Below are positions 22,195 to 46,753 of a DNA stretch of 64,000 nt, piece after piece. Under the pieces are notes generated by a model. That model searched no databases. It saw only the letters and a program-made list of their open reading frames with translations, and was not told the DNA's origin. The stretch is taken from positions 155,677 through 219,676 of IMG/VR virus record IMGVR_UViG_3300033182_000674; one strand, 5' to 3'. How positions within the stretch are numbered: position 1 is the stretch's first letter; every line of letters begins with the position of its first letter. The position numbers were made by a program, and so were the translations under genes.

Positions 22195-22213
22195 TTCTTT
22201 TTATTCCGATTAA

Positions 22214-23548: not shown

Positions 23549-23587
23549 AATAGTTTTCTTCAATAGTTAGTAAAAGTTGATTAATAG

Positions 23588-23595
23588 TATTTATA
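23588..23595 (-). promoter_or_regulatory. T4-type late promoter TATAAATA
   Basis: Exact consensus immediately after the last gene of the radical SAM cassette, 40 nt upstream of ATG 23548. Confidence 0.8.
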
Positions 23596-23601
23596 TGAGA
23601 T

Positions 23602-24000
23602 CTACGACACAGAGAAAAACTCTTCCTCATAATATTCTCTAATATCAGGTATCATTCCTTCCATTGGAATAGGAAAATCTATATTATCTAATAAAAATTC
23701 ATAAACTTCTGGGCTTTCATCATATGTTTTATAGTATGGATCATTACCATATAACAAATCGGGATCCATTAATAGATCCCTAAAGTCTTCTTGAAAATCT
23801 TGACTTATCCAATATGCATAACAAAAAGCAACAACATAACTTTTTGCTGGATATATCCATTCATCTACTCTTTCATAAAAATGCCGTAATGCATTATTCT
23901 TTAAATCATGTGATAAAGTAATTTCTATTTTATTTAGATCATCTTTAAAATAATGGTTTAATTTATGAAATACTTCTTGTCTTATTTTCCATTCTTGCAT
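23602..24000 (-). CDS. Hypothetical protein of the radical SAM cassette (132 aa)
   Basis: ORF overlapping the upstream rSAM gene by 38 nt; aromatic/acidic; no family recognised. Confidence 0.7.
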   Translation of the reverse strand: MQEWKIRQEVFHKLNHYFKDDLNKIEITLSHDLKNNALRHFYERVDEWIYPAKSYVVAFCYAYWISQDFQEDFRDLLMDPDLLYGNDPYYKTYDESPEVYEFLLDNIDFPIPMEGMIPDIREYYEEEFFSVS

Positions 24001-24898
24001 AATCTAATAATCCTTTGTAGCCATTACACGAATTAGTTAGGTCTGTTACATATCTATAATGTTCAGTTAAACAGTGTCCATAATATTCACATTGCTTACA
24101 TATTTCGCTTGTGTTTACTTCAGCTTCATTATCTGCCCATTTCAAATAATCATCAAATGAATCAAGCTCTAAGAAATATTCATTGTCATTCTTATCGAAT
24201 TCTAATACTGCAAATTTGCCATTTGGTGTAATATAAACATGATCATTTGAAAATGCATTATATGTTTTATTTAATGAATCTTCAATATGATATTCATTAA
24301 TAAATTCAAAGCTTTTTTCCACAGGACTTTCTAACCATTTAATAATAAAATCTTCAAAGTCTTTATGTGTTACATTTTGTTGATTAGCTTGATTAGTCGA
24401 ATATGGTTTTATTTCAACTGAAGTAATTGCTCTACACATATTTAATTGTGTAATCATATGATCAACATCCATTTGAATAACCTTTTCTGATGCTAATATA
24501 AGAACAGCAATTGGTACTTCAGACATAAACATATTATTAAATACTTTTTCACTTTGTTCTCTTGCATCGAAATCATATGATACTGATAACGTAATATCAT
24601 CATCAAAGAAAGGTTGATAAACTTTTGAGAAATTAGTATTAATATTAATTTTACCAGTATAATAATTTTTTATAACATTCTTTAACTGATAAAAATAAGA
24701 CTTAGGCATTGCTGTTATTTCTCCGCCATATAAATCTACGTGATCTATATTTGGAACTTGAGATAATAACTCATCTAATTGGCCTAAGTCTATTCGCTTT
24801 TGATCTTTTAATTGCTCAGGTGTTAAATAACAAAAATCACAATTGAAATTACAAAAATAACTTGGATTAATTGATAGATTCATATCTAATATACTCAT
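23963..24898 (-). CDS. Radical SAM protein with C-terminal Cys cluster (311 aa)
   Basis: NPSYFCNFNCDFCY (CxxxCxxC), LYGGE, C-terminal CKQCEYYGHCLTEH...C. Confidence 0.9.
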   Translation of the reverse strand: MSILDMNLSINPSYFCNFNCDFCYLTPEQLKDQKRIDLGQLDELLSQVPNIDHVDLYGGEITAMPKSYFYQLKNVIKNYYTGKININTNFSKVYQPFFDDDITLSVSYDFDAREQSEKVFNNMFMSEVPIAVLILASEKVIQMDVDHMITQLNMCRAITSVEIKPYSTNQANQQNVTHKDFEDFIIKWLESPVEKSFEFINEYHIEDSLNKTYNAFSNDHVYITPNGKFAVLEFDKNDNEYFLELDSFDDYLKWADNEAEVNTSEICKQCEYYGHCLTEHYRYVTDLTNSCNGYKGLLDYARMENKTRSIS

Positions 24899-25916
24899 TA
24901 ATATAAGGTGTTAATTCACGCTCAACTGCATTAGCTTCAAGAATCTTTGGAGCTAACTGTTTCATATGATAGCAATGATCTTCTACCATATTATGATTTT
25001 TTAAATCTTTAATTGTTTTCTTACAACCATTACATATCTCAAACATAGGACATGTGTAACATGCTTGTTTTAAACTACTTAATTCTAAACTATTCATTAA
25101 TGGTGTAAGAAACTCGCCATTCATTTCTCTTTCCCAATCAATGGCCATATCTCTATCATCGCCAAAAGCACCACACGTATAATAGTCACCTTCAGGCTGT
25201 ATAGTTCTTATACCAGCATCACATCCTCTATTTTGTGGACATACTGTTGGTTCACCTTGCAAACGTTTCATCATTTGCATTGTATTAAATTCCCATGAAG
25301 CTAATCCAGCTTCCCATATCTCAACATATTTTTCATATATTTTAGATAAGCGATATGGTTTATCTTGATCGCCACTTGACATTGCATAATTCAATTTACA
25401 TACAACATCCATTTCTTTTGCAAGTTCAACTGTACGTATAGCACTCCATTCATTTTCTTCTGTTATAACAGCAATAAAGTCTGGACGATAACCACAGTGT
25501 TCTAACATTGCATCTGATGCTTTCCAAAAGTCCGCTTCAGTAAATACTTTACCATCACCCATTAGTCTTCCTTTACCATATTGAAATGATGTACATACTC
25601 CAACTCGGGGGTGATTAAATAAATCAACCCATTTTTTTGGTTTAACAACAAATGGCCAAAGATTAGTTGTTAATGATATAGTGGCGTGTGAATCTACTTT
25701 GTCTAAATACTCAATAATCTTCCAATAATAACTTGGATGCATCATTAATGGATCTCCACCATTTACAATAATAGTATTTGTCTCTGGAAATCTATCGATA
25801 AATTGGTAGATACGATCTAGATCTAGTTCTGATGTATGATCATCAGCTATCTTAGTGCTTGAACAGAAAGTGCATTTAAAATTACACTTTTCTGTTGGTT
25901 TAATAATTAAGTCCAT
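24867..25916 (-). CDS. Radical SAM/SPASM protein (349 aa)
   Basis: KPTEKCNFKCTFCSS, NGGDPL, SPASM-like CPQNRGC...YYTC...CYTCPMFEICNGC...C. Confidence 0.92.
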   Translation of the reverse strand: MDLIIKPTEKCNFKCTFCSSTKIADDHTSELDLDRIYQFIDRFPETNTIIVNGGDPLMMHPSYYWKIIEYLDKVDSHATISLTTNLWPFVVKPKKWVDLFNHPRVGVCTSFQYGKGRLMGDGKVFTEADFWKASDAMLEHCGYRPDFIAVITEENEWSAIRTVELAKEMDVVCKLNYAMSSGDQDKPYRLSKIYEKYVEIWEAGLASWEFNTMQMMKRLQGEPTVCPQNRGCDAGIRTIQPEGDYYTCGAFGDDRDMAIDWEREMNGEFLTPLMNSLELSSLKQACYTCPMFEICNGCKKTIKDLKNHNMVEDHCYHMKQLAPKILEANAVERELTPYINEYIRYESIN

Positions 25917-26370
25917 CTATATCATACATAAAGTTGGCGACTATTCTTACATCATCTGTATGAATAACCTTGTGTTGAACGTTTGGTGCTTGGCTTAACA
26001 TAATTAAATCATATTTACTAGGTTGAATAATACCAGTTTTTTCATTATTCATTCTAACCATTAACTCACCATTATTTTTTATATCAGTCATATAATATAA
26101 AAAGAATATATTATAACCTTCTCTTAGATCATTATGCCATTCACATGTAGAATCTTCTGATCCTTTCCATATTGAATGATCTGTTTTATTATAATTACCA
26201 AAAAGCGGTATTACATACTTATCTACAATATATTTATTTGCTTCATTAATATCTATATTGAGCATTTCAAATTGATTATCGTTTACTTCTGGAACATCAA
26301 TAAAAGAATATAACTCCTTATCGATAGTTTGCGCATAACCTTTTATAATAAAATCACTAAAATCAATCAT
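25900..26370 (-). CDS. 2OG-Fe(II) oxygenase-like protein (156 aa)
   Basis: WHND (HxD), following IFFLYYM strand, GELMV, distal QHKV and RIVANF. Confidence 0.7.
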   Translation of the reverse strand: MIDFSDFIIKGYAQTIDKELYSFIDVPEVNDNQFEMLNIDINEANKYIVDKYVIPLFGNYNKTDHSIWKGSEDSTCEWHNDLREGYNIFFLYYMTDIKNNGELMVRMNNEKTGIIQPSKYDLIMLSQAPNVQHKVIHTDDVRIVANFMYDIDGLNY

Positions 26371-26851
26371 CTAATACTGCTTTAAAAGTAAATTTTAAAA
26401 GTTTTCTTGGAGAAGTATTTTCAAAGTTTGTTGCTCTATGTAAAACATCACCATTAAAGAATACTGCTCTTCCTTTTGCAATATTCACATTATGGATATT
26501 GCCGTTATAATCCTTTATTTCTAATGGATCTTCACAATCTTCTAAGTATACAACAACAGTAAAACTAACGTCAGGAATTTCTATATTATCTTCTTCTAAA
26601 TTATCTGGATGAAATTTATAAGAACCATAATCTAAATTATTCGCTAATAATTTTGCGGTACTTAATTTATATCTTTTACCAAGATAATCATTAATTTTTT
26701 CTATAACATAAAAAGCACTCGGTGGAATAATACAATCAGATCTTCCATCACCCCAACTCCAATCTTGAGTTTCATTGGCATATTCTTTAAATATAATATC
26801 GTCAACAAAATCGTCAACAACTTTCCATTCTGGATCAAATACTCTAATCAT
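26363..26851 (-). CDS. 2OG-Fe(II) oxygenase-like protein (162 aa)
   Basis: FHPD (HxD), SFTVVVYL, GRAVFFNGDVLHRA, RKLLKF (2OG-binding Arg). Confidence 0.8.
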   Translation of the reverse strand: MIRVFDPEWKVVDDFVDDIIFKEYANETQDWSWGDGRSDCIIPPSAFYVIEKINDYLGKRYKLSTAKLLANNLDYGSYKFHPDNLEEDNIEIPDVSFTVVVYLEDCEDPLEIKDYNGNIHNVNIAKGRAVFFNGDVLHRATNFENTSPRKLLKFTFKAVLDD

Positions 26852-27866
26852 TCATTTTATCTGCATATTTAAATGTTTCTTTATAAACACAACCATCAAA
26901 GTCACGTTCTAATCTTTTCCAATCATTTCTAACAAAACAACTAAATGGACATCTATTATAATATTCACAACTAAAGCAATCATGATCATTTAAAAACTTT
27001 TCAATAATTGCATCATTGGTATCAGATATTATAGTAATAAAGTCTTCGGTATCTTTATGTTGTCTTATTCTACAACTTGATGTCCTATTATCTGCTTCCA
27101 ATAATAATTTATTTACACTGGGACAACTCATTTTATTTAATGATGCGTTATTAGTAAAAGCAGATAAGTTAGTACATTCTGGATAATGATCTAAAAGGAA
27201 TATATTAAAATTATATAAGTCTCTCTCACTTGGAACAAGTGTATTTGGAACAGTAGGACCTGGTGTCAATTGATCCCAATAACATGGGAATAGACTATAG
27301 AGATAATCAAAATATTCATCACCATTATTTTGAAGGCGATACATACTTTGTTTAGTTGCAACAAGACATATTAAACTAATATGGTCCTTAAAAATTTCTA
27401 TATTTTCTTTGAATATTTTAAATTGTGCTGGATTAAATCTACCTGTTATATCATAACTTACACTTAATTTTAAATTATGTTTTTGTAGCCATTCAAGCAT
27501 AATAGATGTATTATCAAATACAAGATTACTTACAAAATTGAATGTTACAGACTTATCTAATTCATTACATAATTCATTTACACCATCTATAAATTCGTCA
27601 TAGATTGGTAGATATTCATCAAACAAATGATCTTGAAATAATTCGCCACCCATTATATTAAGAATATAATGATATTTGGTATTGGTATTAAAAAAGTCTC
27701 TTATTACATCAAGCTTGGAAAGTATTTGCTCTTTACTTTGACCAATTTTAGATTCATGATCTTGAAAGCAGTGTATACAACGTAAATTACATTCCTCAAA
27801 AAAGAATATTTCTAATTCTCCAGAGTCAGGTATTTTACTTTCTATAACACTTTGTAAATAACTCAT
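26844..27866 (-). CDS. Radical SAM protein with C-terminal Cys cluster (340 aa)
   Basis: FEECNLRCIHCFQ, MGGELF, C-terminal CPS...SSC...CFSCEYYNRCPFSC...C. Confidence 0.9.
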   Translation of the reverse strand: MSYLQSVIESKIPDSGELEIFFFEECNLRCIHCFQDHESKIGQSKEQILSKLDVIRDFFNTNTKYHYILNIMGGELFQDHLFDEYLPIYDEFIDGVNELCNELDKSVTFNFVSNLVFDNTSIMLEWLQKHNLKLSVSYDITGRFNPAQFKIFKENIEIFKDHISLICLVATKQSMYRLQNNGDEYFDYLYSLFPCYWDQLTPGPTVPNTLVPSERDLYNFNIFLLDHYPECTNLSAFTNNASLNKMSCPSVNKLLLEADNRTSSCRIRQHKDTEDFITIISDTNDAIIEKFLNDHDCFSCEYYNRCPFSCFVRNDWKRLERDFDGCVYKETFKYADKMND

Positions 27867-27883
27867 AATAAAAATAAATTAAT

Positions 27884-28933
27884 TTACTTAATTGTAAATT
27901 TAGCTAATTTATCTAATTCATCTTCTTGTTTAAGCGATCTAATATATGTAACAAATGGCAATACAATAGAACCACCTAGTGTAAATGGCAAATAGATTAA
28001 AGCAATTTTTTCATCTAAAATTTCTTGTAAAGCAGATTCAAACTCTTCATCTGTTAGTTCACCTTTATAAACCGAATCAAGATATTTAAACATCATTTCA
28101 GAAGAAATTGGTGATTGAATACCGGTTCCGCTTTGATTGAATGCCATATCACCATAAATTGCACTAGTAACTTTTTGTACAATATCAACGAGCTCTTTAA
28201 CTTCTTTTTCTGTACCATTAGATATATCTAATTTAGAACCAGCTCCACCAACATATGCTTTTCCAATCTCTATGCTTTTTCTGTTATTCCAACAATTATT
28301 AACAAATGGTTTCATACCAGGAAGCTCTTTATAGTTTTTAATAGTTTTCCCTGAGCCGCCTAATAATTCTTGTAAATCATTATCTAAAATTAATATATCA
28401 ATATGGCGACGACACTCTAAAATAGTATCTTCATATTCACGCTTAATCATTTTAGACATTAATGTTTTGAGTTTACTCTTATGGCTAGATCCAGAATCAG
28501 CAAACACAGATGCAATTAAAAATTCATATGAAGGCATATAATCAATATGACTATAATCTCCTTCTTCTGTATCTTCAAAAGAATCTTTCATAATTTGAGC
28601 TAATTGTGTATTTTGCTTTCCATACATTTCAAGTGTATGGTTATAACAATCAACCCATACATCAAATGAATCTTGATCAAAGTTTACGGTTGACTTAAGC
28701 CAATGAGTAGCAATTTGTGCAAAATGAAATGTATCAGCATAGATAGTAACTTTTTCATTCTTAGTAAAGCCAAGTTGAATAACTGATTGTGGTGTTAATG
28801 TTTCTGCCGCAGCAATTATAGATTTAGTATTATAAACATTACCACCATATTCTTTTGATACAACAATACAAGTGTCTAATGTATTAAGATAAGTATCTTG
28901 TTCTAAAAATACATTGTTAAATAAATGGATCAT
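27884..28933 (-). CDS. Hypothetical protein of the radical SAM cassette (349 aa)
   Basis: Long ORF with a 4-nt ATGA overlap with the upstream gene; no family recognised. Confidence 0.8.
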   Translation of the reverse strand: MIHLFNNVFLEQDTYLNTLDTCIVVSKEYGGNVYNTKSIIAAAETLTPQSVIQLGFTKNEKVTIYADTFHFAQIATHWLKSTVNFDQDSFDVWVDCYNHTLEMYGKQNTQLAQIMKDSFEDTEEGDYSHIDYMPSYEFLIASVFADSGSSHKSKLKTLMSKMIKREYEDTILECRRHIDILILDNDLQELLGGSGKTIKNYKELPGMKPFVNNCWNNRKSIEIGKAYVGGAGSKLDISNGTEKEVKELVDIVQKVTSAIYGDMAFNQSGTGIQSPISSEMMFKYLDSVYKGELTDEEFESALQEILDEKIALIYLPFTLGGSIVLPFVTYIRSLKQEDELDKLAKFTIK

Positions 28934-29637
28934 GCTTTTAGCTCCTGCATTGTTTGCAATTTATCAAACATTTTATGATAGTCTTCTATATCTAAACTAC
29001 CTGATGCCATACTATGTGTTAAAATAAACATTGGGTTGTTTCTATTTGCCCAATAACTAAATAAGTTTTTACCTTTAAAAATATATTCATTGAAAAACTT
29101 AGGATAATATCTTAGGTTATCTGATTTAGTTTTTTCAAGCAATGAATATAATGAATCTCTTTTTAATAAACTAACAAAATTAACACCTTTCATATCACCA
29201 TCATCTTCAGCAATTGGTGCATTTTCACTAAACTCTTTAAAAGTTTCGTCTTGAATTGAATGCATATTATATAGTGTTAAACTATCAATTCTTTGTTCCC
29301 AAATATCTAGTTCTTTAGAATACTGTTCTAATACATCTGAATCTATAACTGGAATAATACCTCTTTTTTGCATTAATAAATTAATAATAACTTCTTCAAG
29401 CAATGGTATATTAACTATCGATGTTGAGTTAAGATATACTCCAACCATTTCAACCAATTCATCTGGCTCAGTAATATTTAAATCACAAGGAATATCTAAA
29501 TTACTCAAATATGTAATAAGCTTTTCGCCTTTTAAATTTGAATCTTTATAGTTAATAATAAATTTAGTTTCTTTATCTTCAAAATATAGTTTCAACAAAT
29601 CTATGGAAATAGGTGCTGTTGTTTCAATAATATTCAT
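28930..29637 (-). CDS. Hypothetical protein of the radical SAM cassette (235 aa)
   Basis: GAGGAA Shine-Dalgarno right after the precursor stop; no family recognised. Confidence 0.8.
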   Translation of the reverse strand: MNIIETTAPISIDLLKLYFEDKETKFIINYKDSNLKGEKLITYLSNLDIPCDLNITEPDELVEMVGVYLNSTSIVNIPLLEEVIINLLMQKRGIIPVIDSDVLEQYSKELDIWEQRIDSLTLYNMHSIQDETFKEFSENAPIAEDDGDMKGVNFVSLLKRDSLYSLLEKTKSDNLRYYPKFFNEYIFKGKNLFSYWANRNNPMFILTHSMASGSLDIEDYHKMFDKLQTMQELKA

Positions 29638-29646
29638 AATTTCCTC

Positions 29647-30606
29647 TTATCTTCTGCCACGCGAACCATGACAAGAACTATGACAGCTCGAATGACAAAC
29701 ATCTGTTTGAATAGCTAAATCAGCTGTAGTAGATTGTGCAACCTGCTCCCAAGCGCTTTTTAGAGCATTAAAGTAATTTTCAAGTACACCTGCGGTTATA
29801 ACATAACCTTCTTCAACGCGCATAATCCCATTAATAGCATGTATTCCACCGGTCCAATTTGCTTTTACTTGTCCTACATCAGTTAAATATGAATCATCTA
29901 ATAATGCGTATTTGGTTTCATCAAATGCGATACCAGGATTAGCATAAGTTCCCTTATTTCCGCCTCCGCCAGTTACATTTAATTTAACATTCATTGTTCT
30001 AACACGAGTATATCTATTTGTTTCCCATAATATAGCTTTCCATATTACATATGCTGCAATTGGATTTTCTACTCGCTCAACAATCATATCACCTTGATCA
30101 TCTAAAATTGGTTCAATTGTTAAAATACCATCTGCTGCAGTATCTGCTTGTGCTTGAGCTTTAAATGCTTTTTCAACTGTTGAGAACTTCTCAGTTAAAC
30201 ATCTAGCATACCAATATTGTAAACCACCAATTTCAGCATCACGTTGTAAGTGTGTATTATATAACTTAGCTACTTTATCAACTAATGCTGGACCAGTACC
30301 AGTTTCATATAATAACCAGTCTTCTCTTGGACCATGCGGTAGTGGTCCGTCCCACATTGTAAGATATGTGCCATCTGATTTGCGTATTTTGGCTTTATAA
30401 AAAGTACCTAAAACAAACCAAGACCCATCACTTGGAATTACTTGAGTTATAGGTGTGCCCCAACCGCTAAAGGTAAATCCTTCATACGGTAAATTGTTAG
30501 CAGACCAGACATTAGGATCAGTATGAAAACTATAAACTGCTTTCGCATAATCTAAAAATCTTGGTACAATTTCTTCTTTTTTAACAGGATTAGTTAAACT
30601 CGCCAT
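29647..30606 (-). CDS. Putative modification substrate / precursor protein with C-terminal CHSSCHSSCHGSRGRR (319 aa)
   Basis: Directly downstream of and overlapping an rSAM/SPASM gene; terminal (C-H-x-S)x3 motif; internal DUF4214-like segment. The CDS is secure; the substrate role is inferred. Confidence 0.7.
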   Translation of the reverse strand: MASLTNPVKKEEIVPRFLDYAKAVYSFHTDPNVWSANNLPYEGFTFSGWGTPITQVIPSDGSWFVLGTFYKAKIRKSDGTYLTMWDGPLPHGPREDWLLYETGTGPALVDKVAKLYNTHLQRDAEIGGLQYWYARCLTEKFSTVEKAFKAQAQADTAADGILTIEPILDDQGDMIVERVENPIAAYVIWKAILWETNRYTRVRTMNVKLNVTGGGGNKGTYANPGIAFDETKYALLDDSYLTDVGQVKANWTGGIHAINGIMRVEEGYVITAGVLENYFNALKSAWEQVAQSTTADLAIQTDVCHSSCHSSCHGSRGRR

Positions 30607-31630
30607 TTTGTTTATCCAAATGAATCATTAATAGTTTAGGTGCAGGACAGACATCGCCTTCCCACGGTAATTGGTGGCAATCTCCACCACAATATTTAAA
30701 TACAGGACATGAAAAACATTTAGGATTTCTTCCTCGTTCTTCAGCTATATTTTGTAATCTTCTAGGACTATTTATAAGGTTTTCTATAGAATCGTTTATA
30801 TGACCAAATTGAAATGTTGGCGCAGAATTAGGACAACCTGAAATAGTACCAGTTGCATTAATGGTGAAGATCTTTTCTTCGCAATCTCTACAGAAAGTAC
30901 CACATGTATTTAATCCATTTTCAAACTTAGCATATACATCTTCAAGGAATGAATTTTCAAACCAATTTCTTGCACCAACTTCTTCTGATTGTAAATGCAT
31001 TTTTAAGAACCATTCATTAATTTCCATATTGGATGGGAATATATCTGGATGCTGATTTGCATTACCATCTCTTGTTAATCTTTCAAATGAAACTTCTTGA
31101 ACACCAAGCTCTTTACAAAACTCTAATACTTTAATTGGTTCCATGTTTATTAGTCCTTTTGTAACACTAATAAACATTCTAATTGTTACGCCACGTTTTA
31201 ATAATGATTTAACATTTTTATGCCATAGATTATATTGTCTATCATTATCAAATCGAATATCTGGATCCCATGATGTACCAATACGATTATTTAAACACTC
31301 TTCAATAAATGAATAATGCTCATCATACATTTTAAATGTTAAATTTGATGTAATGCCCCATGACATATCAAGCCATAAGTCTTTACACTCATTATAGACT
31401 TTACGCATTTCAGAGACATGAACAAGAAAAGGCTCACCACCATGAAATTCACAATGAGCCGTATCTAATAAATTAGGTCTATGTTGTCTAAAACGCTTTA
31501 ACCAATCTGCTATTTTATTTGGATTCCAATATTTCTTTGGACCGTTGATTCCATTCGTAAAGCAATGACGGCAATTAAGATTACACGTTTCAGTTGTCTT
31601 TAGGTAGAACATCCATTGCATCATCAGCAT
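30590..31630 (-). CDS. Radical SAM/SPASM protein (346 aa; start may be 31624)
   Basis: KTTETCNLNCRHCF, FHGGEPF, SPASM-like CGTFCRDC...SGC...CFSCPVFKYCGGDC...C; AAGGA lies 5 nt before ATG 31624. Confidence 0.92.
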   Translation of the reverse strand: MLMMQWMFYLKTTETCNLNCRHCFTNGINGPKKYWNPNKIADWLKRFRQHRPNLLDTAHCEFHGGEPFLVHVSEMRKVYNECKDLWLDMSWGITSNLTFKMYDEHYSFIEECLNNRIGTSWDPDIRFDNDRQYNLWHKNVKSLLKRGVTIRMFISVTKGLINMEPIKVLEFCKELGVQEVSFERLTRDGNANQHPDIFPSNMEINEWFLKMHLQSEEVGARNWFENSFLEDVYAKFENGLNTCGTFCRDCEEKIFTINATGTISGCPNSAPTFQFGHINDSIENLINSPRRLQNIAEERGRNPKCFSCPVFKYCGGDCHQLPWEGDVCPAPKLLMIHLDKQNGEFN

Positions 31631-32111
31631 CCTTTAGTTTGTTTTGTATAAAATTTTCAAGTCCAAAACTTAACATTAATGATTCATAGTAATTTGTTGC
31701 GCAATGAGGTGTGTTTGCTGGTATAAAAATAGATTCACCTTCATTTAATATAACTTCATCATTTCCAACAATTAATGTTTTAGTTCCTTCTACACAAAGC
31801 ATATAAACATCATCTGGATCTTTATGCATTGGAAATGAGTATGCATCTTTAGTTGCATAAAAAGCATGACATGTCACTGGACCATTATGTTCGTAATGTA
31901 ATGCTAATTCCTTACAATAATCAAATATCTCTTGATTATATTTTTCTAAACTTTCAATCTTTATAGTGGCGTGGCTATATTTTGATAATTCAAGAGAACT
32001 TTCAAGAACGGTATTTCTACCTTCATCATCTATAATAGACACAATCCTTTCTTCGTAAGGAATCAAATCTTTATTATATAATATTTCAACCAAATTGTAA
32101 ACTGAAAACAT
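31590..32111 (-). CDS. JmjC/cupin-type oxygenase (173 aa)
   Basis: SFPMHKDPDDVYMLCVEGTKTL and GESIFIPANTPHCA: HxD...H triad in a JmjC (YcfD/ROX-like) context. Confidence 0.85.
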   Translation of the reverse strand: MFSVYNLVEILYNKDLIPYEERIVSIIDDEGRNTVLESSLELSKYSHATIKIESLEKYNQEIFDYCKELALHYEHNGPVTCHAFYATKDAYSFPMHKDPDDVYMLCVEGTKTLIVGNDEVILNEGESIFIPANTPHCATNYYESLMLSFGLENFIQNKLKDADDAMDVLPKDN

Positions 32112-32125
32112 GACAAATTCTTTCG

Positions 32126-33235
32126 TTATAATTTAAGAATACATTCAACTAATTTTAAAGCTTCGCTATAATTATCTTCTAACGCAATACCAACTAATCT
32201 TCCAGTACCATTTACAGAAGCTATACCATTACTTGATACATATACACCTTCACCTTTCTTAACTGGATCAGTAACTTTAACAGGAACTCGACCAACTAGT
32301 GCAAGAGGTACACCACCTTCTAATTCACTATTCATAAGAACAGCTGGCTTTTCAGAGATAACACCCACAGGACACACTGTTGCATTGGCTGCGGTTACTT
32401 CTTTTTCTCCACCAACCATCATTACTGTACCAACTTCATATTCTTCATCTGGTAAATATTTCTCAGCCAAGTCAGCGTATTGAGCAAATTGAGCAACACC
32501 AGACATAAAGGTAATGTATGCATTAGAAAATGGACTACCGGCTGTACCGATTTGACGACCAGATCCTGATGCTTTAATATTGGCCGCCATTGTGACGTCA
32601 TCATTAAATGTTTTTAAGCTATTAATCGCTTGATTAACATCCGTATACACAACACCTGATGGCATTACCGCACGATCTAATTGCGCGCCTGATGTGGCAA
32701 TCTTACTAATTGGAATAGTAGGTAATAAAGCTAAATCAAATGTTTCACCAAAAGAAGCTGATGTTCTAGATGCAGGTAACGACGGAATAGTATTCAAATA
32801 TAGAACACCTGTGTCGATCCAACTCGCATCTAATAATGGAATTCTACCACGGCCTAATACACCAGAATTAATTTTATTTGCATCTAATGATGGAATTCTT
32901 AGTGGATCAAATTGACCAGTAGTAATTTTTGCTGCACTTAAACTAGGAATATCGGTTTCTTGTAATACATCACATGTATATGTAAAGACAGCATTAGATG
33001 GATCATATGTTAAATTACTATATGTTCCTTGACCATTTTTTGTAACAGTAAATAAGTTTTTCGCTTCGGTTTCAGTGATAAACTTAGTTTCCATTGAATT
33101 AATTGCGTCAACAATAGTAACATCAGTATCAGTAATTAGATTATCTAAATCACCAACCCATGTGCTAAGACAATTCGTCTTTTGACGCCATGCTTCTAGC
33201 GAATTACTTAAATCAACATATATCGTTCTAGCCAT
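32126..33235 (-). CDS. Fibre protein with C-terminal peptidase G2-like autoproteolytic chaperone (369 aa)
   Basis: LEAWRQKTN N-terminus, IPSLDANKINSG repeats, C-terminal YADLAEKY...GVISEKPAVLMN...ALVGRVPVKV...KGEGVYVS...VGIALED. Confidence 0.75.
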   Translation of the reverse strand: MARTIYVDLSNSLEAWRQKTNCLSTWVGDLDNLITDTDVTIVDAINSMETKFITETEAKNLFTVTKNGQGTYSNLTYDPSNAVFTYTCDVLQETDIPSLSAAKITTGQFDPLRIPSLDANKINSGVLGRGRIPLLDASWIDTGVLYLNTIPSLPASRTSASFGETFDLALLPTIPISKIATSGAQLDRAVMPSGVVYTDVNQAINSLKTFNDDVTMAANIKASGSGRQIGTAGSPFSNAYITFMSGVAQFAQYADLAEKYLPDEEYEVGTVMMVGGEKEVTAANATVCPVGVISEKPAVLMNSELEGGVPLALVGRVPVKVTDPVKKGEGVYVSSNGIASVNGTGRLVGIALEDNYSEALKLVECILKL

Positions 33236-33458
33236 TCTGATGTACCTTTTGAATTAATTCCTTAAGAAGATCTTTAATTTCTCCAACCTCTGTTTTTAAA
33301 TTTTCAAGATCTTGTTTTTCTTGTTTCCTAGCTTGTTTAATTTCCTTTAATCTATCTATTTCAGATTGATTATCACATAATATAGCATTTGTTTTAGGAT
33401 CACGATATAAACCACTATGATCCTTGACTGGTATTAACCTATCACGTATATCACTCAT
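33228..33458 (-). CDS. Conserved small hypothetical protein of T4-like phages (76 aa)
   Basis: Track start 33476; ATG at 33458 follows the DUF4815 stop (TAA-T-ATG); LYRDPKTNAIL motif plus coiled-coil C-terminus. Confidence 0.7.
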   Translation of the reverse strand: MSDIRDRLIPVKDHSGLYRDPKTNAILCDNQSEIDRLKEIKQARKQEKQDLENLKTEVGEIKDLLKELIQKVHQNG

Positions 33459-33459
33459 A

Positions 33460-36400
33460 TTAATTTGCCAATGCAATTGCTCTTAAATCTCTTACCACTG
33501 GTACTTTACCCATAGTAGTTGAAGTAAAGACTAGTTTTAATTGGAAGGTATCAAAATCATCAAGTGTTCCATCAACACCACCAATTGTATATTCATAGTC
33601 TCTGAAAATATTTTTATTTTCATCTGATGGTACTAACGAATCAGGTGTTGCTAATGTCCACTCTTTCTCATAAATACCGTCTGAACCTTGAGTTGTTCTA
33701 TAATAGACATCCATTCTACATACAGAAGGTCTGTTTGCAGCAATCAAAACTTTTAAACCACTTGCATTATTCAATAATGATACTGGTTTAGTTATGTGTT
33801 TAGCTGCTGCTGAACCACCTGTTGCAGAAGTTTCTGGTACAAAACCAATAACTTCATTATATCCATTACCTGTTCCTGGATTATCTATAACATTTTCAAT
33901 CATAGTTAAACTTGCACGTTGCATATCAACAACAGGTGAAACATATTTGTTAGACGATGTCATATTAACTGTAACAATCGCAGACTTAGATACCGCATTA
34001 TAAGATGCAGGATTTTCTTGACCTCTATCTCTAATTACTCTTGGATAATTGTCTAATGGATTATCTTCATTATTAATTAAACTAAAGTGTTCAGTTGGAT
34101 CTTGCGCATATAAACTTTCTTGACCAGCATATGATTGAGTCGAAGTAAACTGACCTTTTAAATTATATGCAGAGCCAGTTGGTTCCAATACAGCAATTGC
34201 TGGTTGAACAGAATTGAATGCAAAACATTGTGTTACAACAACCGAGTTACCACCAACAGGTGTAGGAGCAATAGGACTAGGTGGTGTGACACTAAATCCA
34301 GCAGGCTTATCAATTGTATAACCTGTATGATCTACTTTAACAATAGTATGATCATCATTCAATGCATTTAATCCAGATATAACAGAATTATCAACACCGT
34401 CAATTGTTACAGTATTACCAACTTGGAATCCATGTCCTGGATGTAAAATCTTGATATATTGAGGATTTGTTTCAGTTGGATCATCATCCCACCATAATAC
34501 AATAGGATCAAATTGTAATAACTTACGAGGAGGAGAATGATTAACAAGAACAGCTTTACCTGATGCATTATCACCAAAGTTTGCTTTGTGTAAATCAAAC
34601 TTAAGATCTTCCCACTGTAATGCTTCCCAAGTCGATGCATTTTGAGATTTAAATAATGAACCATAGAATGCTTGCTTAGAAATTCTCTTTTCAGTTGTTC
34701 CTAATTCAAACTCACCAACTTTAGACATCCATACTTTATATGCTGGTGTTACAGTTTGAACCATAACTGCATATTCAGTATTACCTTTAAGATATACTGG
34801 CTCATCAAATTCAAAGTCAGTACCAACAGTAGCATCTGCTGAAGTAACAACATCACTAGACTGTAATAGCTTATATGAACCAGGAAGAATATCAGTAGAT
34901 GAAGGATAACCATTAACCATTGGTCTTAGTTGTACCCATACTGGATTTTCATCTTTAGATTCAAAATAAACAGTAACTTTAGTTGCAAACATACCTGCAG
35001 GATCTGTTACTTTAAATGATTGTGCAATTGGATCGCCACCATCACCGTCACCTGGATCAGGTTGGAAGTTAGTCCAATTAACAGAACTTTCAACAACAGA
35101 TGTTTCTACACCAGTTACTTCTAAATGACGAGTTGAAAGAATATCTTTTTGACGTGTATGTAAATAACCAGTTGAAGTAAAGATAGTCTTTGCTTTACTA
35201 ATTGCATCTTTTTCTTTAGGTATAGAAATATCTAATAATTTAAATTCATTCTCACCTGTTCTAAATCTTCTAGTATTATTATTAGGAATAAAGAAGACAC
35301 CTTCAACAGTACCTTGAGCATCAGTATATAGTTCATCAGCTCCACCAGGAATTGCTTGAGCTAAGTCATAAATATTACCTGGTTCAATCTTATCTGCGTC
35401 AATATTAGCATTCATCATTTCAATTGCTTTACGAGAGAATGATTCTCTTCTACACCAAGATGAAACATCAGCATTATCAAAGAATGGCCACACTCTAGTG
35501 TTAGGCATTAAGCCTTCACCTTTAAATGAAACATAGCGTGATCTCATAAATGGAATTAAGTCAACACTTACTTCACGATCACCAATTTCTTCATGTACAA
35601 TATTAGAACTTGTAATTGTATTAACAACTGTTGTAACAGTATCATCTCTCCACGATGTTGTGCGAGTACCACCGCCTTCTCTGTTACTTGTTTGTCTATT
35701 GGTACTACCAGTAACATGAGTTTGACTAACAGAGTCACCTACACTTAATTGATTCGGATCTACGCCGTGCCAGTTAAAGTTCCAATCATTCCATCTTAAT
35801 GCACCTTCGTAATGAACAACTGTGCCATTATCAATAATGTTTGGATCCATGTACTCTGTAACATGCCATGTATCAGATGCTGGTGATAATGTAATATGAC
35901 CAGGATAATCTAATGTCATATATGGATTAACTTGAATAGTCGAGTTTGCTTGATCATGTGAGATCGCAACTTCTTCAGTATAATCTAAATAAACATTATC
36001 ACCTTTAAGTACAGTATTAGATGATAGGTTTGGTTCAAAATATAAACCAATATGCTTTGATAGATATCCAGGACGAACGTTCTTATTTAGAATATCAATA
36101 GACGCTCTATATTCAGGATTTCTTGTATCTGCATTATATCCTGATGCAAAATTATCAACAAAGAAACCAGACTTAGCTCTATTACGGCCATCAGCATCCA
36201 ATACATCAATATTTTTAGTATCTAATTCTAATAATGATAATGCTGTTGTTCTTTCGATTTGAGTAATTCTCTTATCCAATTTACCGATATCACGCATCGT
36301 ATAACGACGATTATCGATCATTGTATAATCTACATAATCAGGACCAGAAACATTACCTGGCATATCAATAGTATATAATGCCATTGAGTTATCTGGCGTT

Positions 36401-46270: not shown

Positions 46271-46271
46271 C

Positions 46272-46721
46272 TTATCTTAACCTTGTTAGTTGTGTTGTTA
46301 ATTCTACTACTTCACTAGTATTAACAACTTTAAATGTAATTGATACATCAATCGTATATTCGTCATAGCCAATATCAGCTACAATCCTTTGTACTTGTGC
46401 TCTAGGTTCATACATTTCAATAGCATGTCTAATTTGTGATTCAACATCATCTTCGAATATACCAGTAGATAATTCAAATAATAATCCTTGAATATTAGCA
46501 CCAAAGTATGGTTGAAATGGCTTTTCATAATAGTTAGTTAGAATAAGATTCTTTACTGCTTGTTTAACAGCAGCAGCATCATTCTTTTTAAAGATATCAC
46601 CATTTCTTTTACGCGCAAAAGTCAAATCGATATCTTTATAAGATGTCAATTTCTGCGATGTAATCCTAGTTATAGAATTAAGATTACGATCTTCTGCTGA
46701 TAAACTCTTTACGATTGCCAT
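46272..46721 (-). CDS. gp25: Baseplate wedge subunit gp25
   Basis: YKDIDLTF, AVKQAVKNLILTNYYEKPFQPYFGANIQGLLFE, IEMYEPRA. Confidence 0.95.
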   Translation of the reverse strand: MAIVKSLSAEDRNLNSITRITSQKLTSYKDIDLTFARKRNGDIFKKNDAAAVKQAVKNLILTNYYEKPFQPYFGANIQGLLFELSTGIFEDDVESQIRHAIEMYEPRAQVQRIVADIGYDEYTIDVSITFKVVNTSEVVELTTQLTRLR

Positions 46722-46742
46722 ATGTTAAAACTCTTTTTCTTA

Positions 46743-46750
46743 TATTTATA
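46743..46750 (-). promoter_or_regulatory. T4-type late promoter TATAAATA
   Basis: Exact consensus in the intergenic gap 22 nt upstream of gp25. Confidence 0.8.
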
Positions 46751-46753
46751 CCT

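What the first reader, a model, noticed from the sequence alone, without database searches (positions are those of the whole stretch)
25900..32111. Three minimal Fe(II)/2OG-type oxygenases (156, 162 and 173 aa) interleaved with the rSAM genes
Oxygen-requiring hydroxylases are co-encoded with oxygen-sensitive rSAM enzymes. The JmjC one resembles protein His/Arg hydroxylases (YcfD/ROX-like). Possible targets are the His residues of the CHxS tail or Asp residues of the DS-rich fibres. Marine T4-like phages often carry 2OG oxygenases, but their substrates are largely unknown, so this context gives a testable substrate.
Basis: partly seen in the sequence, partly recalled or inferred. Interest (0 to 1): 0.6.

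Follow-up and report, generated by a model that had tools for sequence, protein, structure and literature searches.

The report
Oxygenases inside a phage radical-SAM cassette
Three very small iron/2-oxoglutarate oxygenase genes really do sit between four radical-SAM genes in the tail-fibre region of a marine jumbo phage. The same combination recurs in dozens of other phages, which points to one conserved protein tail as the thing they modify, but no substrate has been shown.

Summary
Three minus-strand ORFs (156, 162 and 173 aa) overlap their radical-SAM (rSAM) neighbours and keep an intact HxD...H iron triad plus a basic 2OG-binding residue.

- **p173:** a minimal JmjC domain. Its confident model matches the ribosomal oxygenases YcfD (Z 16.9), NO66 and MINA53 over nearly its whole length.
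- **p156:** a solid member of a phage PF13640 family.
- **p162:** a divergent relative of the same superfamily.

- The cupin lies directly upstream of rSAM-A in 50 of 55 loci.
- Of 53 related IMG/VR loci, 52 carry at least one of these 2OG families in the cassette zone: 137 of 711 ORFs there, against 0 of 399 in the flanks.
- Cultured jumbo phages (RSL2, RSF1, FLC6, S13, DT01, Atu_ph07) carry the same cassette, annotated but unexplained.

The cupin is near-core. The two small oxygenases are movable accessories, like the B12-rSAM and halogenase genes that fill the same slots elsewhere.

The likeliest shared substrate is the 319-aa protein's near-invariant C-terminal CHxSCHxSCHxSRxRR tail. This is inferred only; a complex prediction gave no verdict.

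The supposed oxygen paradox is not real. I rate this a new variant of a known kind.

The parts
31590..32111 (-). p173: minimal JmjC (ROX-like) cupin oxygenase. H96-x-D98, K111 and H136 are conserved. Near-core gene of the cassette, overlapping rSAM-A by 41 nt.
   Evidence: Pfam Cupin_2 1.5e-10 and JmjC_2 2.9e-7, 30.5 bits against cut-off 22. phrog_8014 1.5e-28. AF2 model pLDDT 91. YcfD Z 16.9 over 164 aa, NO66 Z 16.2 over 169 aa, MINA53 Z 15.2. Invariant K51, E56, H82, F93, H96, D98, G109, H136, S148 in 33 sequences. Directly upstream of rSAM-A in 50 of 55 loci.
30590..31630 (-). rSAM-A: radical-SAM/SPASM maturase, the conserved partner of the cupin.
   Evidence: Pfam Radical_SAM. NCBIfam SPASM domain TIGR04085 35.8 bits (cut-off 27). 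Full-length but far sub-threshold hits to PapB, DynA and anSME. 40-48% identical to the rSAM next to the cupin in RSL2, DT01 and Atu_ph07.
29647..30606 (-). T319: 319-aa protein ending in CHSSCHSSCHGSRGRR (tail at 29650-29697). Candidate common substrate of the cassette.
   Evidence: phrog_35144 on residues 280-319. Tail found in 49 of 63 related loci. In 34 aligned tails, C35, H36, C39, C43, H44, R47, R49 and R50 are invariant. Same tail in RSL2, DT01 and Atu_ph07.
28930..29637 (-). P235: conserved cassette protein of unknown function.
   Evidence: phrog_20767 4.9e-55. Present in 49 loci. No Pfam, NCBIfam or PDB sequence match.
27884..28933 (-). Q349: conserved cassette protein of unknown function.
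   Evidence: One family of 45 members in 45 loci. No Pfam or PDB match.
26844..27866 (-). rSAM-B: radical-SAM enzyme with a Cys-rich C-terminus.
   Evidence: CxxxCxxC motif. Fer4_12 and PapB-like weak hits. Found in 60 loci.
26363..26851 (-). p162: divergent small DSBH Fe(II)/2OG oxygenase (H76-P-D78, H138, R149). Accessory tailoring gene.
   Evidence: PhyH 0.013 and PF13759 0.093, both sub-threshold. phrog_274 2.9e-11. Catalytic residues align to the p156-family HMM. Model pLDDT 69; all top Foldseek hits are 2OG prolyl hydroxylases. Atlas TM 0.70-0.76 to 2OG clusters. Its 61-62% identical homologues lie between rSAM-C and rSAM-D on other contigs.
25900..26370 (-). p156: small PF13640-type (prolyl-hydroxylase-like) Fe(II)/2OG oxygenase (H79-N-D81, H133, R142). 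Accessory tailoring gene.
   Evidence: PF13640 17.9 bits, sub-threshold alone. Family A1: 62 members in 36 loci; H79, H133 and R142 invariant, D81 in at least 90%; 27 of 37 members hit PF13640. Leave-one-out HMM E 2.7e-38. Atlas pTM 0.89, TM 0.75 to 2OG-FeII_Oxy_3/4 clusters.
24867..25916 (-). rSAM-C: radical-SAM/SPASM maturase, the most conserved gene of the cassette.
   Evidence: Pfam Radical_SAM 6.8e-9. DynA-, anSME- and SPASM-like hits. 53-59% identical in RSL2, DT01 and Atu_ph07. Used to fetch 60 loci.
23963..24898 (-). rSAM-D: radical-SAM enzyme.
   Evidence: Pfam Radical_SAM 2.6e-5. 44-52% identical in DT01 and Atu_ph07.
23602..24000 (-). E132: small conserved protein that closes the cassette.
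   Evidence: phrog_20737 5.2e-36. Present in 50 loci.
32126..33235 (-). F369: fibre-like protein with an intramolecular-chaperone domain, directly upstream of the cupin. This is context: the host-recognition module.
   Evidence: Peptidase_G2 IMC domain 26.2 bits (cut-off 25). Precedes the cupin in 32 loci.

Best explanation
The three genes encode Fe(II)/2-oxoglutarate-dependent protein hydroxylases. I propose they act as tailoring enzymes of a conserved, phage-borne radical-SAM protein-maturation cassette in the tail-fibre (host-recognition) module of a marine T4-like jumbo phage.

**Core of the cassette:** JmjC cupin, rSAM-A, T319 (ending in CHxSCHxSCHxSRxRR), P235, Q349, rSAM-B, rSAM-C, rSAM-D, E132.

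**The cupin.** It is a stripped-down ribosomal-oxygenase-type JmjC domain. It is probably made together with rSAM-A, since the two genes overlap. I propose that it hydroxylates a side chain of the T319 tail. Its structural relatives NO66 and MINA53 hydroxylate His at C-3 and YcfD hydroxylates Arg, so a His or an Arg is the likeliest target. The SPASM-type rSAM enzymes would act on the Cys, His or Ser residues.

**p156 and p162.** These are prolyl-hydroxylase-like DSBH enzymes from two accessory families. Members of these families move between slots of the cassette and vary from 0 to 6 copies. They would add optional hydroxylations to the same product or to a neighbouring fibre.

**Shown:** gene structure, fold or family, intact catalytic residues, and conserved linkage.
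**Inferred:** 2OG dependence, enzymatic activity, the substrate, and the order of steps.
For: **Fold and residues**
- p173: pLDDT 91, YcfD Z 16.9 over 164 of 173 aa, NO66 Z 16.2 over 169 aa; plain cupins align over only about 97 aa.
- H96, D98 and H136 are invariant. K111 sits 13 residues after D98 and is present in at least 90% of sequences. That is the same spacing as the 2OG-binding R148 after D135 in Rhodothermus YcfD (PMC5862935).
- p156 and p162 carry HxD...H...R, with 2OG-oxygenase family and structure matches.

**Linkage**
- The cupin abuts rSAM-A in 50 of 55 loci and lies in the cassette in 53 of 55, usually overlapping it by 4-59 nt.
- 52 of 53 loci with rSAM-B, C and D carry at least one A1 or A2 oxygenase in the cassette zone: 137 of 711 ORFs against 0 of 399 outside. 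This spans about 22 lineages at 80% rSAM-C identity.
- The closest homologues of p162 also sit between two rSAM genes.
- Cultured jumbo phages show the same gene set. FLC6 and S13 list cupin gp70, rSAM gp71/76/79(/81) and 2OG gp80/82.

**Tailoring-cluster character**
- The same slots hold B12-binding rSAM genes, extra rSAM genes and a Trp-halogenase-like FAD enzyme (E 5e-76) in other loci.

**Candidate substrate**
- The T319 tail is near-invariant across all lineages and follows rSAM-A directly.

**Precedent**
- In the bacterial HXS system, rSAM enzymes mature a protein carrying HxS repeats (PMC13128918).
Against: - There is no biochemical or expression evidence. No RNA run holds the region.
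- The cupin plus tail complex prediction gave no verdict.
- p156 and p162 are individually below Pfam thresholds. The p162 model is only moderate and is poor around the putative iron ligands.
- By sequence alone, the cupin's best PDB hits are quercetinase-type Cupin_2 proteins.
- Cassette variants keep the cupin without a T319 gene in the 21-kb locus (L039-L046). In L020-L022 the tail ORF lies 12 kb away.
- Contigs binned to Bdellovibrionota have T319 and the rSAM genes but no detectable cupin or 2OG gene.
- The genome carries three further 2OG oxygenases elsewhere.
Confidence: 0.55

Rival explanations
1. The oxygenases belong to the cassette's neighbourhood but act on the adjacent tail-fibre proteins rather than on the T319 tail. 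Examples would be Asp/Asn, Pro or Lys hydroxylation of the Asp/Ser-rich giant fibres.
For: The cassette is embedded between fibre genes. The fibres are D- and S-rich, with 22 DSAY motifs in the 4627-aa ORF and 123 DS dipeptides. The structural neighbours of p162 are protein prolyl hydroxylases, including a viral collagen-type one. Cupin-containing variants lack T319 in the locus.
Against: The oxygenase genes are wedged between, and overlap, rSAM genes rather than fibre genes. The fibres flanking the cassette differ widely between loci, while the tail and cassette are constant. No fibre protein co-varies visibly with oxygenase content, although I did not test this formally.
Confidence: 0.2
2. 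The 173-aa cupin is not a 2OG oxygenase. It is a metal-binding, non-oxidative partner of rSAM-A, for example a substrate-presenting or iron-handling subunit, or a 2OG-independent cupin dioxygenase or isomerase.
For: The strongest sequence-level matches are to Cupin_2 and quercetin 2,3-dioxygenase. JGI names relatives 'mannose-6-phosphate isomerase-like cupin'. It lacks every ROX domain outside the JmjC barrel. Its tight pairing with one rSAM gene resembles an enzyme-plus-accessory-subunit arrangement.
Against: The whole 173 aa, not just the barrel, superposes on ROX JmjC domains (Z 16-17 against about 11.5 for plain cupins). JmjC_2 is above its Pfam cut-off. The triad is HxD...H rather than the cupin HxH...E...H. 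A basic residue sits at the ROX 2OG-binding position.
Confidence: 0.12
3. p156 and p162 are generic marine-phage 2OG oxygenase genes (auxiliary 'moron' genes). They accumulate in the hypervariable host-recognition region without any functional tie to the rSAM genes.
For: Marine T4-like phages carry many such genes, and this genome has three more elsewhere. Position and copy number inside the cassette vary. The usually linked PF13759-type gene has moved 124 kb away in this genome. 2OG-free cassettes exist.
Against: 137 of 711 ORFs in the cassette zone against 0 of 399 ORFs in the flanks of the same loci. The linkage recurs in very distant phages: the phiKZ-related RSL2, RSF1 and FLC6, and DT01. 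The genes overlap rSAM genes.
Confidence: 0.08
4. The small DSBH enzymes modify nucleic acids or small molecules (AlkB/TET-like or metabolite hydroxylases), not proteins.
For: A PHROG family matching p162 is labelled 'DNA endonuclease V'. One ALKBH8 structure appears among the weaker fold hits.
Against: The best family and fold matches are protein prolyl hydroxylases and PF13640/PF13759. The context is a protein-maturation cassette in the structural module. The PHROG label is probably an annotation error for a 2OG family.
Confidence: 0.04

Closest known systems
Ribosomal oxygenases (ROX) of the JmjC family: E. coli/Rhodothermus YcfD, human NO66 and MINA53
   Same: The JmjC double-stranded beta-helix of p173 superposes over 164-169 of its 173 residues (Z 15-17). 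It has the HxD...H triad and a basic residue 13 positions after the Asp, as for the 2OG-binding Arg of YcfD. Pfam JmjC_2 is above its cut-off. These enzymes hydroxylate His or Arg side chains of proteins, and both residues are invariant in the T319 tail.
   Different: p173 is 173 aa against 360-640 aa. It has no helical dimerisation domain and no C-terminal winged-helix domain. The spacing between the triad histidines is shorter (40 against about 62 residues). Sequence identity is only 12-18%. It is encoded by phages next to an rSAM gene, and nothing suggests a ribosomal substrate.
Small prolyl-4-hydroxylase-type 2OG oxygenases (PF13640/PF13661): PBCV-1 collagen prolyl hydroxylase, Pseudomonas P4H acting on EF-Tu, PHD2
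   Same: p156 and p162 share the HxD...H...R motif and the DSBH fold. Most p156-family members hit PF13640. These are protein hydroxylases, one of them viral.
   Different: p156 and p162 are shorter (156-162 aa against about 180-250 aa). They are individually below Pfam thresholds. They have no known substrate and are embedded between rSAM genes.
PF13759 (2OG-FeII_Oxy_5) proteins of marine bacteria and cyanophages (structural-genomics entries 3bvc and 2rg4)
   Same: The A2 family, to which p162 is loosely tied, hits PF13759 in 16 of 18 members and matches 3bvc and 2rg4 at about 1e-6. A roughly 190-aa member follows E132 in most cassettes.
   Different: p162 itself is a divergent outlier (11-19% identity; PF13759 E 0.093). 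No member of this family has an established function.
HXS antiphage system (HxsA, HxsB, HxsC, HxsD; Li et al., Nat Commun 2026, PMC13128918)
   Same: Two rSAM enzymes mature a protein, not a short peptide, that carries His-Xaa-Ser repeats next to basic residues. A +8 Da change maps to an SHRSS motif. The T319 tail contains three H-x-S units followed by RxRR. rSAM-A and rSAM-C give weak hits to HxsB and HxsC.
   Different: The hits are far below the equivalog cut-offs (33 against 370 bits; 32 against 268 bits). The phage motif is C-H-x-S with invariant Cys. The phage cassette has four rSAM genes plus oxygenases. T319 has no detectable peptidoglycan-binding domain. It is phage-encoded, in a fibre module. 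The HXS system is not reported to contain oxygenases.
RiPP-type pathways that combine rSAM maturases with O2-dependent tailoring (from general knowledge: polytheonamide PoyB/C/D with the Fe/2OG hydroxylase PoyI; PQQ with PqqE plus the O2-dependent PqqB and PqqC)
   Same: SPASM-type rSAM enzymes, a conserved core sequence at the end of a precursor, and interchangeable tailoring genes: 2OG oxygenases, B12-rSAM and a halogenase.
   Different: The presumed precursor is a 180-320-aa protein with a C-terminal core. No RRE/PqqD domain or leader protease was found. The cassette lies in a virion structural module rather than a natural-product locus.
The annotated but uninterpreted gene set in cultured jumbo phages (Ralstonia RSL2/RSF1, Burkholderia FLC6/FLC8/S13, Pseudomonas pPa_SNUABM_DT01, Agrobacterium Atu_ph07), and the 'radical SAM cassettes' noted in the host-recognition cluster of pelagimyophages (PMC7029224)
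   Same: Same order: cupin, rSAM, tail protein, P235..., rSAM, rSAM, rSAM, with 35-59% identity. 2OG oxygenases are listed beside them. The location downstream of the giant structural protein in the host-recognition region also matches.
   Different: Those papers only list the annotations. None of those I could search describes the conserved tail, the ROX-like nature of the cupin or a function. In RSL2 the variable slot holds DHFR-like genes instead of the p156 family.

Membership tests
Fe(II)/2OG-dependent oxygenase superfamily (DSBH fold) | 2-His-1-carboxylate iron triad (HxD/E...H) | tested here: met
   p156: H79, D81, H133. p162: H76, D78, H138. p173: H96, D98, H136. These are invariant or near-invariant in family alignments, and the p162 residues align to the p156-family HMM.
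Fe(II)/2OG-dependent oxygenase superfamily (DSBH fold) | Basic residue that binds the 2OG C-5 carboxylate | tested here: met
   R142 (p156) and R149 (p162) are invariant, 9-11 residues after the distal His. K111 of p173 is present in at least 90% of sequences and lies 13 residues after D98, matching D135/R148 of Rhodothermus YcfD.
Fe(II)/2OG-dependent oxygenase superfamily (DSBH fold) | Double-stranded beta-helix fold | tested here: met
   p173: pLDDT 91, JmjC matches at Z 12-17. p156: Atlas model pTM 0.89, TM 0.75 to 2OG clusters. p162: only moderate, pLDDT 69 with TMq about 0.5, but every top hit is a 2OG oxygenase.
Fe(II)/2OG-dependent oxygenase superfamily (DSBH fold) | Curated Pfam score threshold reached by the protein itself | tested here: inconclusive
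   p173 passes JmjC_2 (30.5 against 22) and Cupin_2. p156 (17.9 against 27) and p162 (16.3 against 22; 13.6 against 27) do not. Their families do at E <= 0.01: 27 of 37 and 16 of 18 members.
Fe(II)/2OG-dependent oxygenase superfamily (DSBH fold) | 2OG decarboxylation coupled to substrate oxidation | not testable with these tools
   Needs purified protein, Fe(II), 2OG and O2.
Ribosomal oxygenases (ROX: YcfD/NO66/MINA53) | JmjC catalytic domain of the ROX type | tested here: met
   The best structural matches of the p173 model are YcfD (Z 16.9), NO66 (16.2) and MINA53 (15.2), ahead of other JmjC proteins (Z 11-13). The A3 profile hits MINA53 at E 0.0024.
Ribosomal oxygenases (ROX: YcfD/NO66/MINA53) | Helical dimerisation domain and C-terminal winged-helix domain | tested here: not met
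   p173 is 173 aa and aligns only to the JmjC part (YcfD residues 34-226 of about 370; NO66 241-446). It is therefore ROX-like in its catalytic domain but not a ROX family member.
Ribosomal oxygenases (ROX: YcfD/NO66/MINA53) | Ribosomal-protein His/Arg substrate | not testable with these tools
   The genomic context (rSAM cassette in a fibre module) argues for a different substrate, but I could not test this.
HXS (His-Xaa-Ser) rSAM system | HxsB and HxsC equivalog rSAM enzymes | tested here: not met
   rSAM-A against TIGR03978: 33 bits (cut-off 370). rSAM-C against TIGR03977: 32 bits (cut-off 268). Only the N-terminal rSAM core aligns.
HXS (His-Xaa-Ser) rSAM system | Target protein with tandem HxS repeats near basic residues | tested here: inconclusive
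   The tail has three H-x-S units followed by RxRR. However, the unit is C-H-x-S with invariant Cys. There are three units rather than five, and no peptidoglycan-binding domain was detected.
rSAM/SPASM peptide-maturase (RiPP-like) cassette | CxxxCxxC rSAM core plus a SPASM/twitch auxiliary-cluster domain | tested here: met
   All four rSAM proteins have CxxxCxxC. SPASM TIGR04085 scores 35.8 bits in rSAM-A (cut-off 27) and 24.6 in rSAM-C. There are full-length weak hits to PapB, DynA, anSME and DarE.
rSAM/SPASM peptide-maturase (RiPP-like) cassette | Co-encoded precursor with a conserved core, and a recognition (RRE/PqqD) element | tested here: inconclusive
   A conserved C-terminal core is present. 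No RRE/PqqD domain was detected in any cassette protein by Pfam or NCBIfam. P235, Q349 and E132 remain unassigned.

The most novel reading that the evidence does not exclude
The cassette makes a previously undescribed post-translationally built structure on a phage host-recognition-module protein. The invariant CHxSCHxSCHxSRxRR tail would be cross-linked by four SPASM rSAM enzymes and hydroxylated on a His or Arg by a minimal ROX-type JmjC enzyme that works as an obligate partner of rSAM-A. Interchangeable 2OG oxygenases, B12-rSAM enzymes and halogenases would diversify the product between phages. That would be the first protein-hydroxylase/rSAM partnership in virion or host-entry maturation. 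It might also be a phage-side counterpart of the bacterial HxS-repeat (HXS) barrier to DNA entry.
Probability: 0.2. Interest if true: 0.85.

Novelty: new variant of a known kind. Interest (0 to 1): 0.62.

Why it matters
- **An open question becomes testable.** 2OG oxygenases are among the commonest unexplained genes of marine T4-like phages. Two of their families, plus a minimal JmjC enzyme, are tied here to one conserved gene cassette and to one near-invariant 16-residue sequence. That turns 'substrate unknown' into a concrete mass-spectrometry experiment.
- **Cultured systems are available.** The same cassette sits in the Ralstonia, Burkholderia, Pseudomonas and Agrobacterium jumbo phages, so genetics and virion proteomics are possible now.
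- **The cupin is of structural interest.** At 173 aa, it is much shorter than the ROX enzymes it matches here (360-460-residue chains) and would define the catalytic core of that family.
- **Possible biological role.** If the product is part of the adsorption or DNA-entry apparatus, it would be a new type of enzymatic virion-protein maturation and a new source of host-range variation.

Tried and rejected
- **megablast against phages:** window 22000-34000 gave no match, so no close cultured relative.
- **tblastn and single-protein locus searches:** tblastn of p162 against phages found nothing. The search for related loci with p156 or p162 alone in IMG/VR found nothing. Relatives only appeared when I fetched loci through rSAM-C.
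- **Direct PDB sequence searches:** p162 gave none and p156 only chance-level hits.
- **Complex prediction:** p173 plus the last 50 residues of T319 plus Fe scored a median of 0.21 against a mark of 0.32. This is no verdict, and I do not use it for or against binding.
- **Alignment-based scans of genome contigs:** The single-sequence scan worked.
- **PDB sequence searches of P235, Q349 and T319:** nothing.
- **Expression:** only DNA metagenome runs (marine, estuary, aquaculture) hold the region. I did not use read laying, because contigs cannot show transcription.
- **Rejected, HXS membership:** the cassette is not a member of the HXS system; equivalog scores are far too low.
- **Rejected, p162 orthology:** p162 is not the orthologue of the usual post-E132 PF13759 gene. 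It does not match that group's HMM, and the true orthologue is at genome position 55960-56493.
- **Rejected, oxygen paradox:** I found no basis for one.
- **Not used:** the large representative-protein search, because family scans and the word search had already settled the families.

Full report
**1. What is in the sequence**

The window is the last 64 kb of a 219,676-bp IMG/VR virus record estimated to be complete. From 19.6 to 54 kb, every sizeable gene is on the minus strand.

They are interleaved with four radical-SAM (rSAM) genes:
- rSAM-A, 30590-31630
- rSAM-B, 26844-27866
- rSAM-C, 24867-25916
- rSAM-D, 23963-24898

Each has a CxxxCxxC motif near its N-terminus. These four are the only such genes a motif scan found in the whole genome.

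The genes are packed with overlaps:
- p173/rSAM-A: 41 nt
- rSAM-B/p162: 8 nt
- p162/p156: 8 nt
- p156/rSAM-C: 17 nt

This is what one expects of a co-translated operon.

The surroundings are the baseplate and tail-fibre module of a T4-like myovirus. PHROG hits include baseplate wedge, hub/lysozyme and tail fibre proteins. Fibre proteins with intramolecular-chaperone domains are also present. The phage is marine or estuarine: only DNA metagenome runs from such habitats hold the region.

**2. Are they oxygenases?**

*p173.*
- It passes Pfam's curated thresholds for Cupin_2 (41 bits) and JmjC_2 (30.5 bits against 22).
- With an alignment of 33 homologues, AlphaFold2 gives a confident model (pLDDT 91).
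- Its best structural matches are the ribosomal oxygenases E. coli YcfD (Z 16.9, 164 residues aligned), human NO66 (Z 16.2, 169 residues, rmsd 2.6) and MINA53 (Z 15.2).
- Other JmjC enzymes follow at Z 11-13. Ordinary small cupins match only about 97 residues, at Z about 11.5.
- In the family alignment, H96, D98 and H136 are invariant.
- K111 is present in at least 90% of sequences. It lies 13 residues after the Asp, the same spacing as the 2OG-binding Arg148 after Asp135 in Rhodothermus YcfD (PMC5862935).

So p173 is the bare JmjC catalytic domain of a ROX-type enzyme, without the dimerisation and winged-helix domains. On domain architecture it is not a family member.

*p156.*
- Alone it is below the PF13640 threshold (17.9 against 27 bits).
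- It belongs to a family of 62 ORFs in 36 related loci.
- In that family, H79, H133 and R142 are invariant and D81 nearly so.
- 27 of 37 members hit PF13640.
- An HMM built without the window sequence finds p156 at E 2.7e-38.
- The ESM Atlas model of this exact sequence (pTM 0.89) matches 2OG-FeII_Oxy_3/4 clusters at TM 0.75.

*p162.* This is the weakest case. Its sequence hits are marginal (PhyH 0.013; PF13759 0.093). It is only 11-19% identical to the PF13759-type family it loosely clusters with. The evidence in its favour is:
- H76-P-D78, H138 and R149 align with the catalytic columns of the p156-family HMM.
- Every top Foldseek hit of a moderate model (pLDDT 69) is a 2OG prolyl hydroxylase or relative.
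- The Atlas structure search returns 2OG clusters at TM 0.70-0.76.

I accept it as a divergent 2OG oxygenase.

**3. Is the linkage real?**

*Cultured phages.*
- tblastn of p173 finds homologues of 35-43% identity in the Ralstonia phages RSL2 and RSF1, Burkholderia FLC6, FLC8 and S13, and Pseudomonas pPa_SNUABM_DT01. It also finds them in Agrobacterium Atu_ph07 and Sinorhizobium Phosso.
- In the three records I opened, the cupin gene is immediately followed by the orthologue of rSAM-A. Then comes a protein with the same C-terminal tail as the window's 319-aa protein, then the P235 homologue, and then rSAM-B, C and D.
- Published descriptions of FLC6 and S13 list 'cupin gp70, radical SAM gp71/76/79(/81), 2OG-Fe(II) oxygenase gp80/gp82' without interpretation.

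*Metagenomic loci.* Fetching IMG/VR loci through rSAM-C gave 60 loci at 55-73% identity. They fall into about 22 lineages at 80% identity and 13 at 70%. Their gene maps share this order:

[giant structural protein - small ORF - fibre] - cupin - rSAM-A - tail protein - P235 - Q349 - rSAM-B - {slot} - rSAM-C - {slot} - rSAM-D - E132 - (a PF13759-type oxygenase of about 190 aa) - small ORFs - giant fibre

*The cupin.* It lies directly upstream of rSAM-A in 50 of 55 loci where that position is covered, and elsewhere in the cassette in 3 more. It usually overlaps rSAM-A by 4-59 nt.

*The two DSBH families.*
- They occupy the slots in variable number, from 0 to 6.
- 52 of 53 loci with rSAM-B, C and D have at least one.
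- They make up 137 of 711 ORFs in the cassette zone.
- None of the 399 ORFs in the flanks of the same loci belongs to either family.

*The closest relatives of p162.* These (61-62% identity) lie between rSAM-C and rSAM-D on independent ENA contigs.

The three genes therefore differ in status. The cupin is near-core, while p156 and p162 are mobile accessories.

**4. What the cassette looks like as a whole**

*Interchangeable genes.* The slots that hold 2OG oxygenases in this phage hold other tailoring-type genes elsewhere:
- a B12-binding rSAM in 13 loci
- extra rSAM genes
- in three loci, a flavin-dependent tryptophan-halogenase-like enzyme (E 5e-76)

RSL2 has DHFR-like genes in that position. 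Interchangeable tailoring genes of this kind are typical of a post-translational-modification (RiPP-like) gene cluster.

*rSAM type.* rSAM-A carries a SPASM domain above threshold. rSAM-A and rSAM-C give full-length but far sub-threshold matches to the peptide maturases PapB, DynA, DarE and anSME.

*The candidate substrate.*
- The obvious candidate is the protein after rSAM-A (29647-30606).
- Its N-terminal part varies in length (about 180-320 aa).
- Its last 16 residues are CHxSCHxSCHxSRxRR in 49 of 63 related loci, from marine phages to Ralstonia and Agrobacterium phages.
- In 34 aligned tails, C35, H36, C39, C43, H44, R47, R49 and R50 are invariant.

*The closest described analogue.*
- In the bacterial HXS antiphage system, two rSAM enzymes mature a protein with His-Xaa-Ser repeats. 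A +8 Da modification maps to an SHRSS motif (PMC13128918).
- The phage rSAM enzymes hit the HxsB and HxsC models only weakly, at 32-33 bits against cut-offs of 268-370.
- This is therefore a resemblance, not membership.

*Prior mention.* A pelagimyophage survey had already noted 'radical SAM cassettes' in the host-recognition cluster, without analysis.

**5. Most likely mechanism**

*Shown:*
- three oxygenase-fold proteins with intact iron and 2OG-binding residues
- tight, conserved operonic linkage to SPASM rSAM genes and to a protein with an invariant Cys/His/Ser/Arg tail
- a variable set of tailoring genes

*Inferred:*
- The cupin hydroxylates a side chain of that tail. His or Arg is the best guess, because NO66 and MINA53 make 3-hydroxy-His, YcfD makes 3-hydroxy-Arg, and both residue types are invariant in the tail.
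- It may act in concert with rSAM-A, while the rSAM enzymes process the Cys, His or Ser residues.
- p156 and p162 add optional hydroxylations to the same product or to nearby fibres.

*The oxygen question.* Co-encoding O2-dependent and rSAM enzymes needs no special explanation. rSAM enzymes work in aerobes. From general knowledge, the PQQ and polytheonamide pathways combine rSAM and O2-dependent steps. The halogenase-like gene found here is a further O2-dependent partner.

**6. Evidence against, and limits**

- There is no biochemical or expression evidence.
- The complex prediction of the cupin with the tail gave no verdict.
- Some cassette variants keep the cupin and rSAM genes with no tail gene within the 21-kb locus (L039-L046), or with the tail ORF 12 kb away (L020-L022).
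- Three contigs binned to Bacteriovoracaceae/Bdellovibrionota MAGs carry the tail protein and the rSAM genes, but no detectable cupin or 2OG gene. They lie beside a fibre-like gene with an endosialidase-chaperone domain, so they are probably phage-derived. The oxygenases are therefore not essential to the core chemistry.
- The genome has three more 2OG oxygenases outside the cassette. One of them (genome 55960-56493) is the orthologue of the gene that normally follows E132. Here it lies 124 kb away.
- P235, Q349 and E132 have no recognisable family.

**7. Verdict**

The enzymes are new members of known superfamilies. Three things have not, as far as I could find in the searchable literature, been described:
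- the minimal ROX-like cupin fused operonically to an rSAM maturase
- the cassette
- the invariant tail

I rate it a new variant of a known kind, with interest 0.62.

Noticed in passing
window 29650-29697 (-); also L001, L002, L003 and 46 IMG/VR loci: The 16-residue C-terminal tail CHxSCHxSCHxSRxRR is almost invariant from marine T4-like phages to the phiKZ-related Ralstonia phages and Agrobacterium Atu_ph07, while the rest of the protein varies from about 85 to 320 aa. It contains three His-x-Ser units, reminiscent of the HxS repeats of the bacterial HXS defence effector.
   Followed up: partly
G000:C1:55960-56493 (-), outside the window: The PF13759-type 2OG oxygenase that follows E132 in most related cassettes is missing from that position here. 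Its clear orthologue (HMM E 2e-49) lies about 124 kb away in the same genome. In the window, extra fibre genes (449, 837 and 1543 aa) are inserted after E132 instead.
   Followed up: partly
L033:13154-14506, L034 and L063; L006:6662-8332 and 12 other loci: Related cassettes carry other tailoring-type genes in the same slots. These are a flavin-dependent tryptophan-halogenase-like protein (Pfam E 5e-76), a 500-590-aa B12-binding rSAM (methyltransferase-like), and extra rSAM genes.
   Followed up: partly
L075, L076, L077 (contigs of 22-247 kb binned to Bacteriovoracaceae/Bdellovibrionota MAGs): The tail protein and the rSAM set (with rSAM-A duplicated) occur without any detectable cupin or 2OG gene, next to a fibre-like gene with a Peptidase_S74 chaperone domain. 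These may be prophages or mis-binned jumbo-phage contigs, and they hint at a possible host group.
   Followed up: partly
L020-L022 and L039-L046: A rearranged variant (cupin, rSAM-A, rSAM-C, rSAM-D, E132, rSAM-B) faces a second, opposite-strand row of four to six further rSAM-like genes. In L020-L022 an 85-aa ORF with the same tail ends that row.
   Followed up: no
window 30769-30776 (-); also 14395, 23588, 54300 (-) and 56917 (+): Matches to the T4 late-promoter consensus TATAAATA are rarer than chance overall (8 against about 16 expected), but most lie just upstream of structural genes. One lies inside rSAM-A, about 160 nt upstream of the start of the tail-protein gene, and could give that gene its own late transcript.
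   Followed up: no
window 462-14345 (-), 19681-22194 (-), 38932-40773 (-): The giant 4627-aa fibre ORF has no Cys, is 9.7% Asp and 8.6% Ser, and has 123 DS dipeptides and 22 DSAY motifs. Two other fibre ORFs are also Asp/Ser-rich.
   Followed up: no
L001:15463-16612 (Ralstonia phage RSL2 ORF073 and ORF074): In RSL2, the slot between rSAM-B and rSAM-C holds an annotated dihydrofolate reductase and a second DHFR-like ORF instead of 2OG oxygenases. A PF13759-type oxygenase (ORF076) lies between rSAM-C and rSAM-D.
   Followed up: no
phrog_274 (hit by window 26363-26851): The PHROG family that best matches p162 is labelled 'DNA endonuclease V', although the matching region is the 2OG-oxygenase catalytic core. 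The label looks like an annotation error.
   Followed up: no
G000:C1:17817-18845 and 45820-47151, outside the window: Two larger ORFs (about 340 and 440 aa) elsewhere in the genome contain canonical PF13640 domains above threshold. The phage therefore encodes at least six oxygenases of this superfamily.
   Followed up: no
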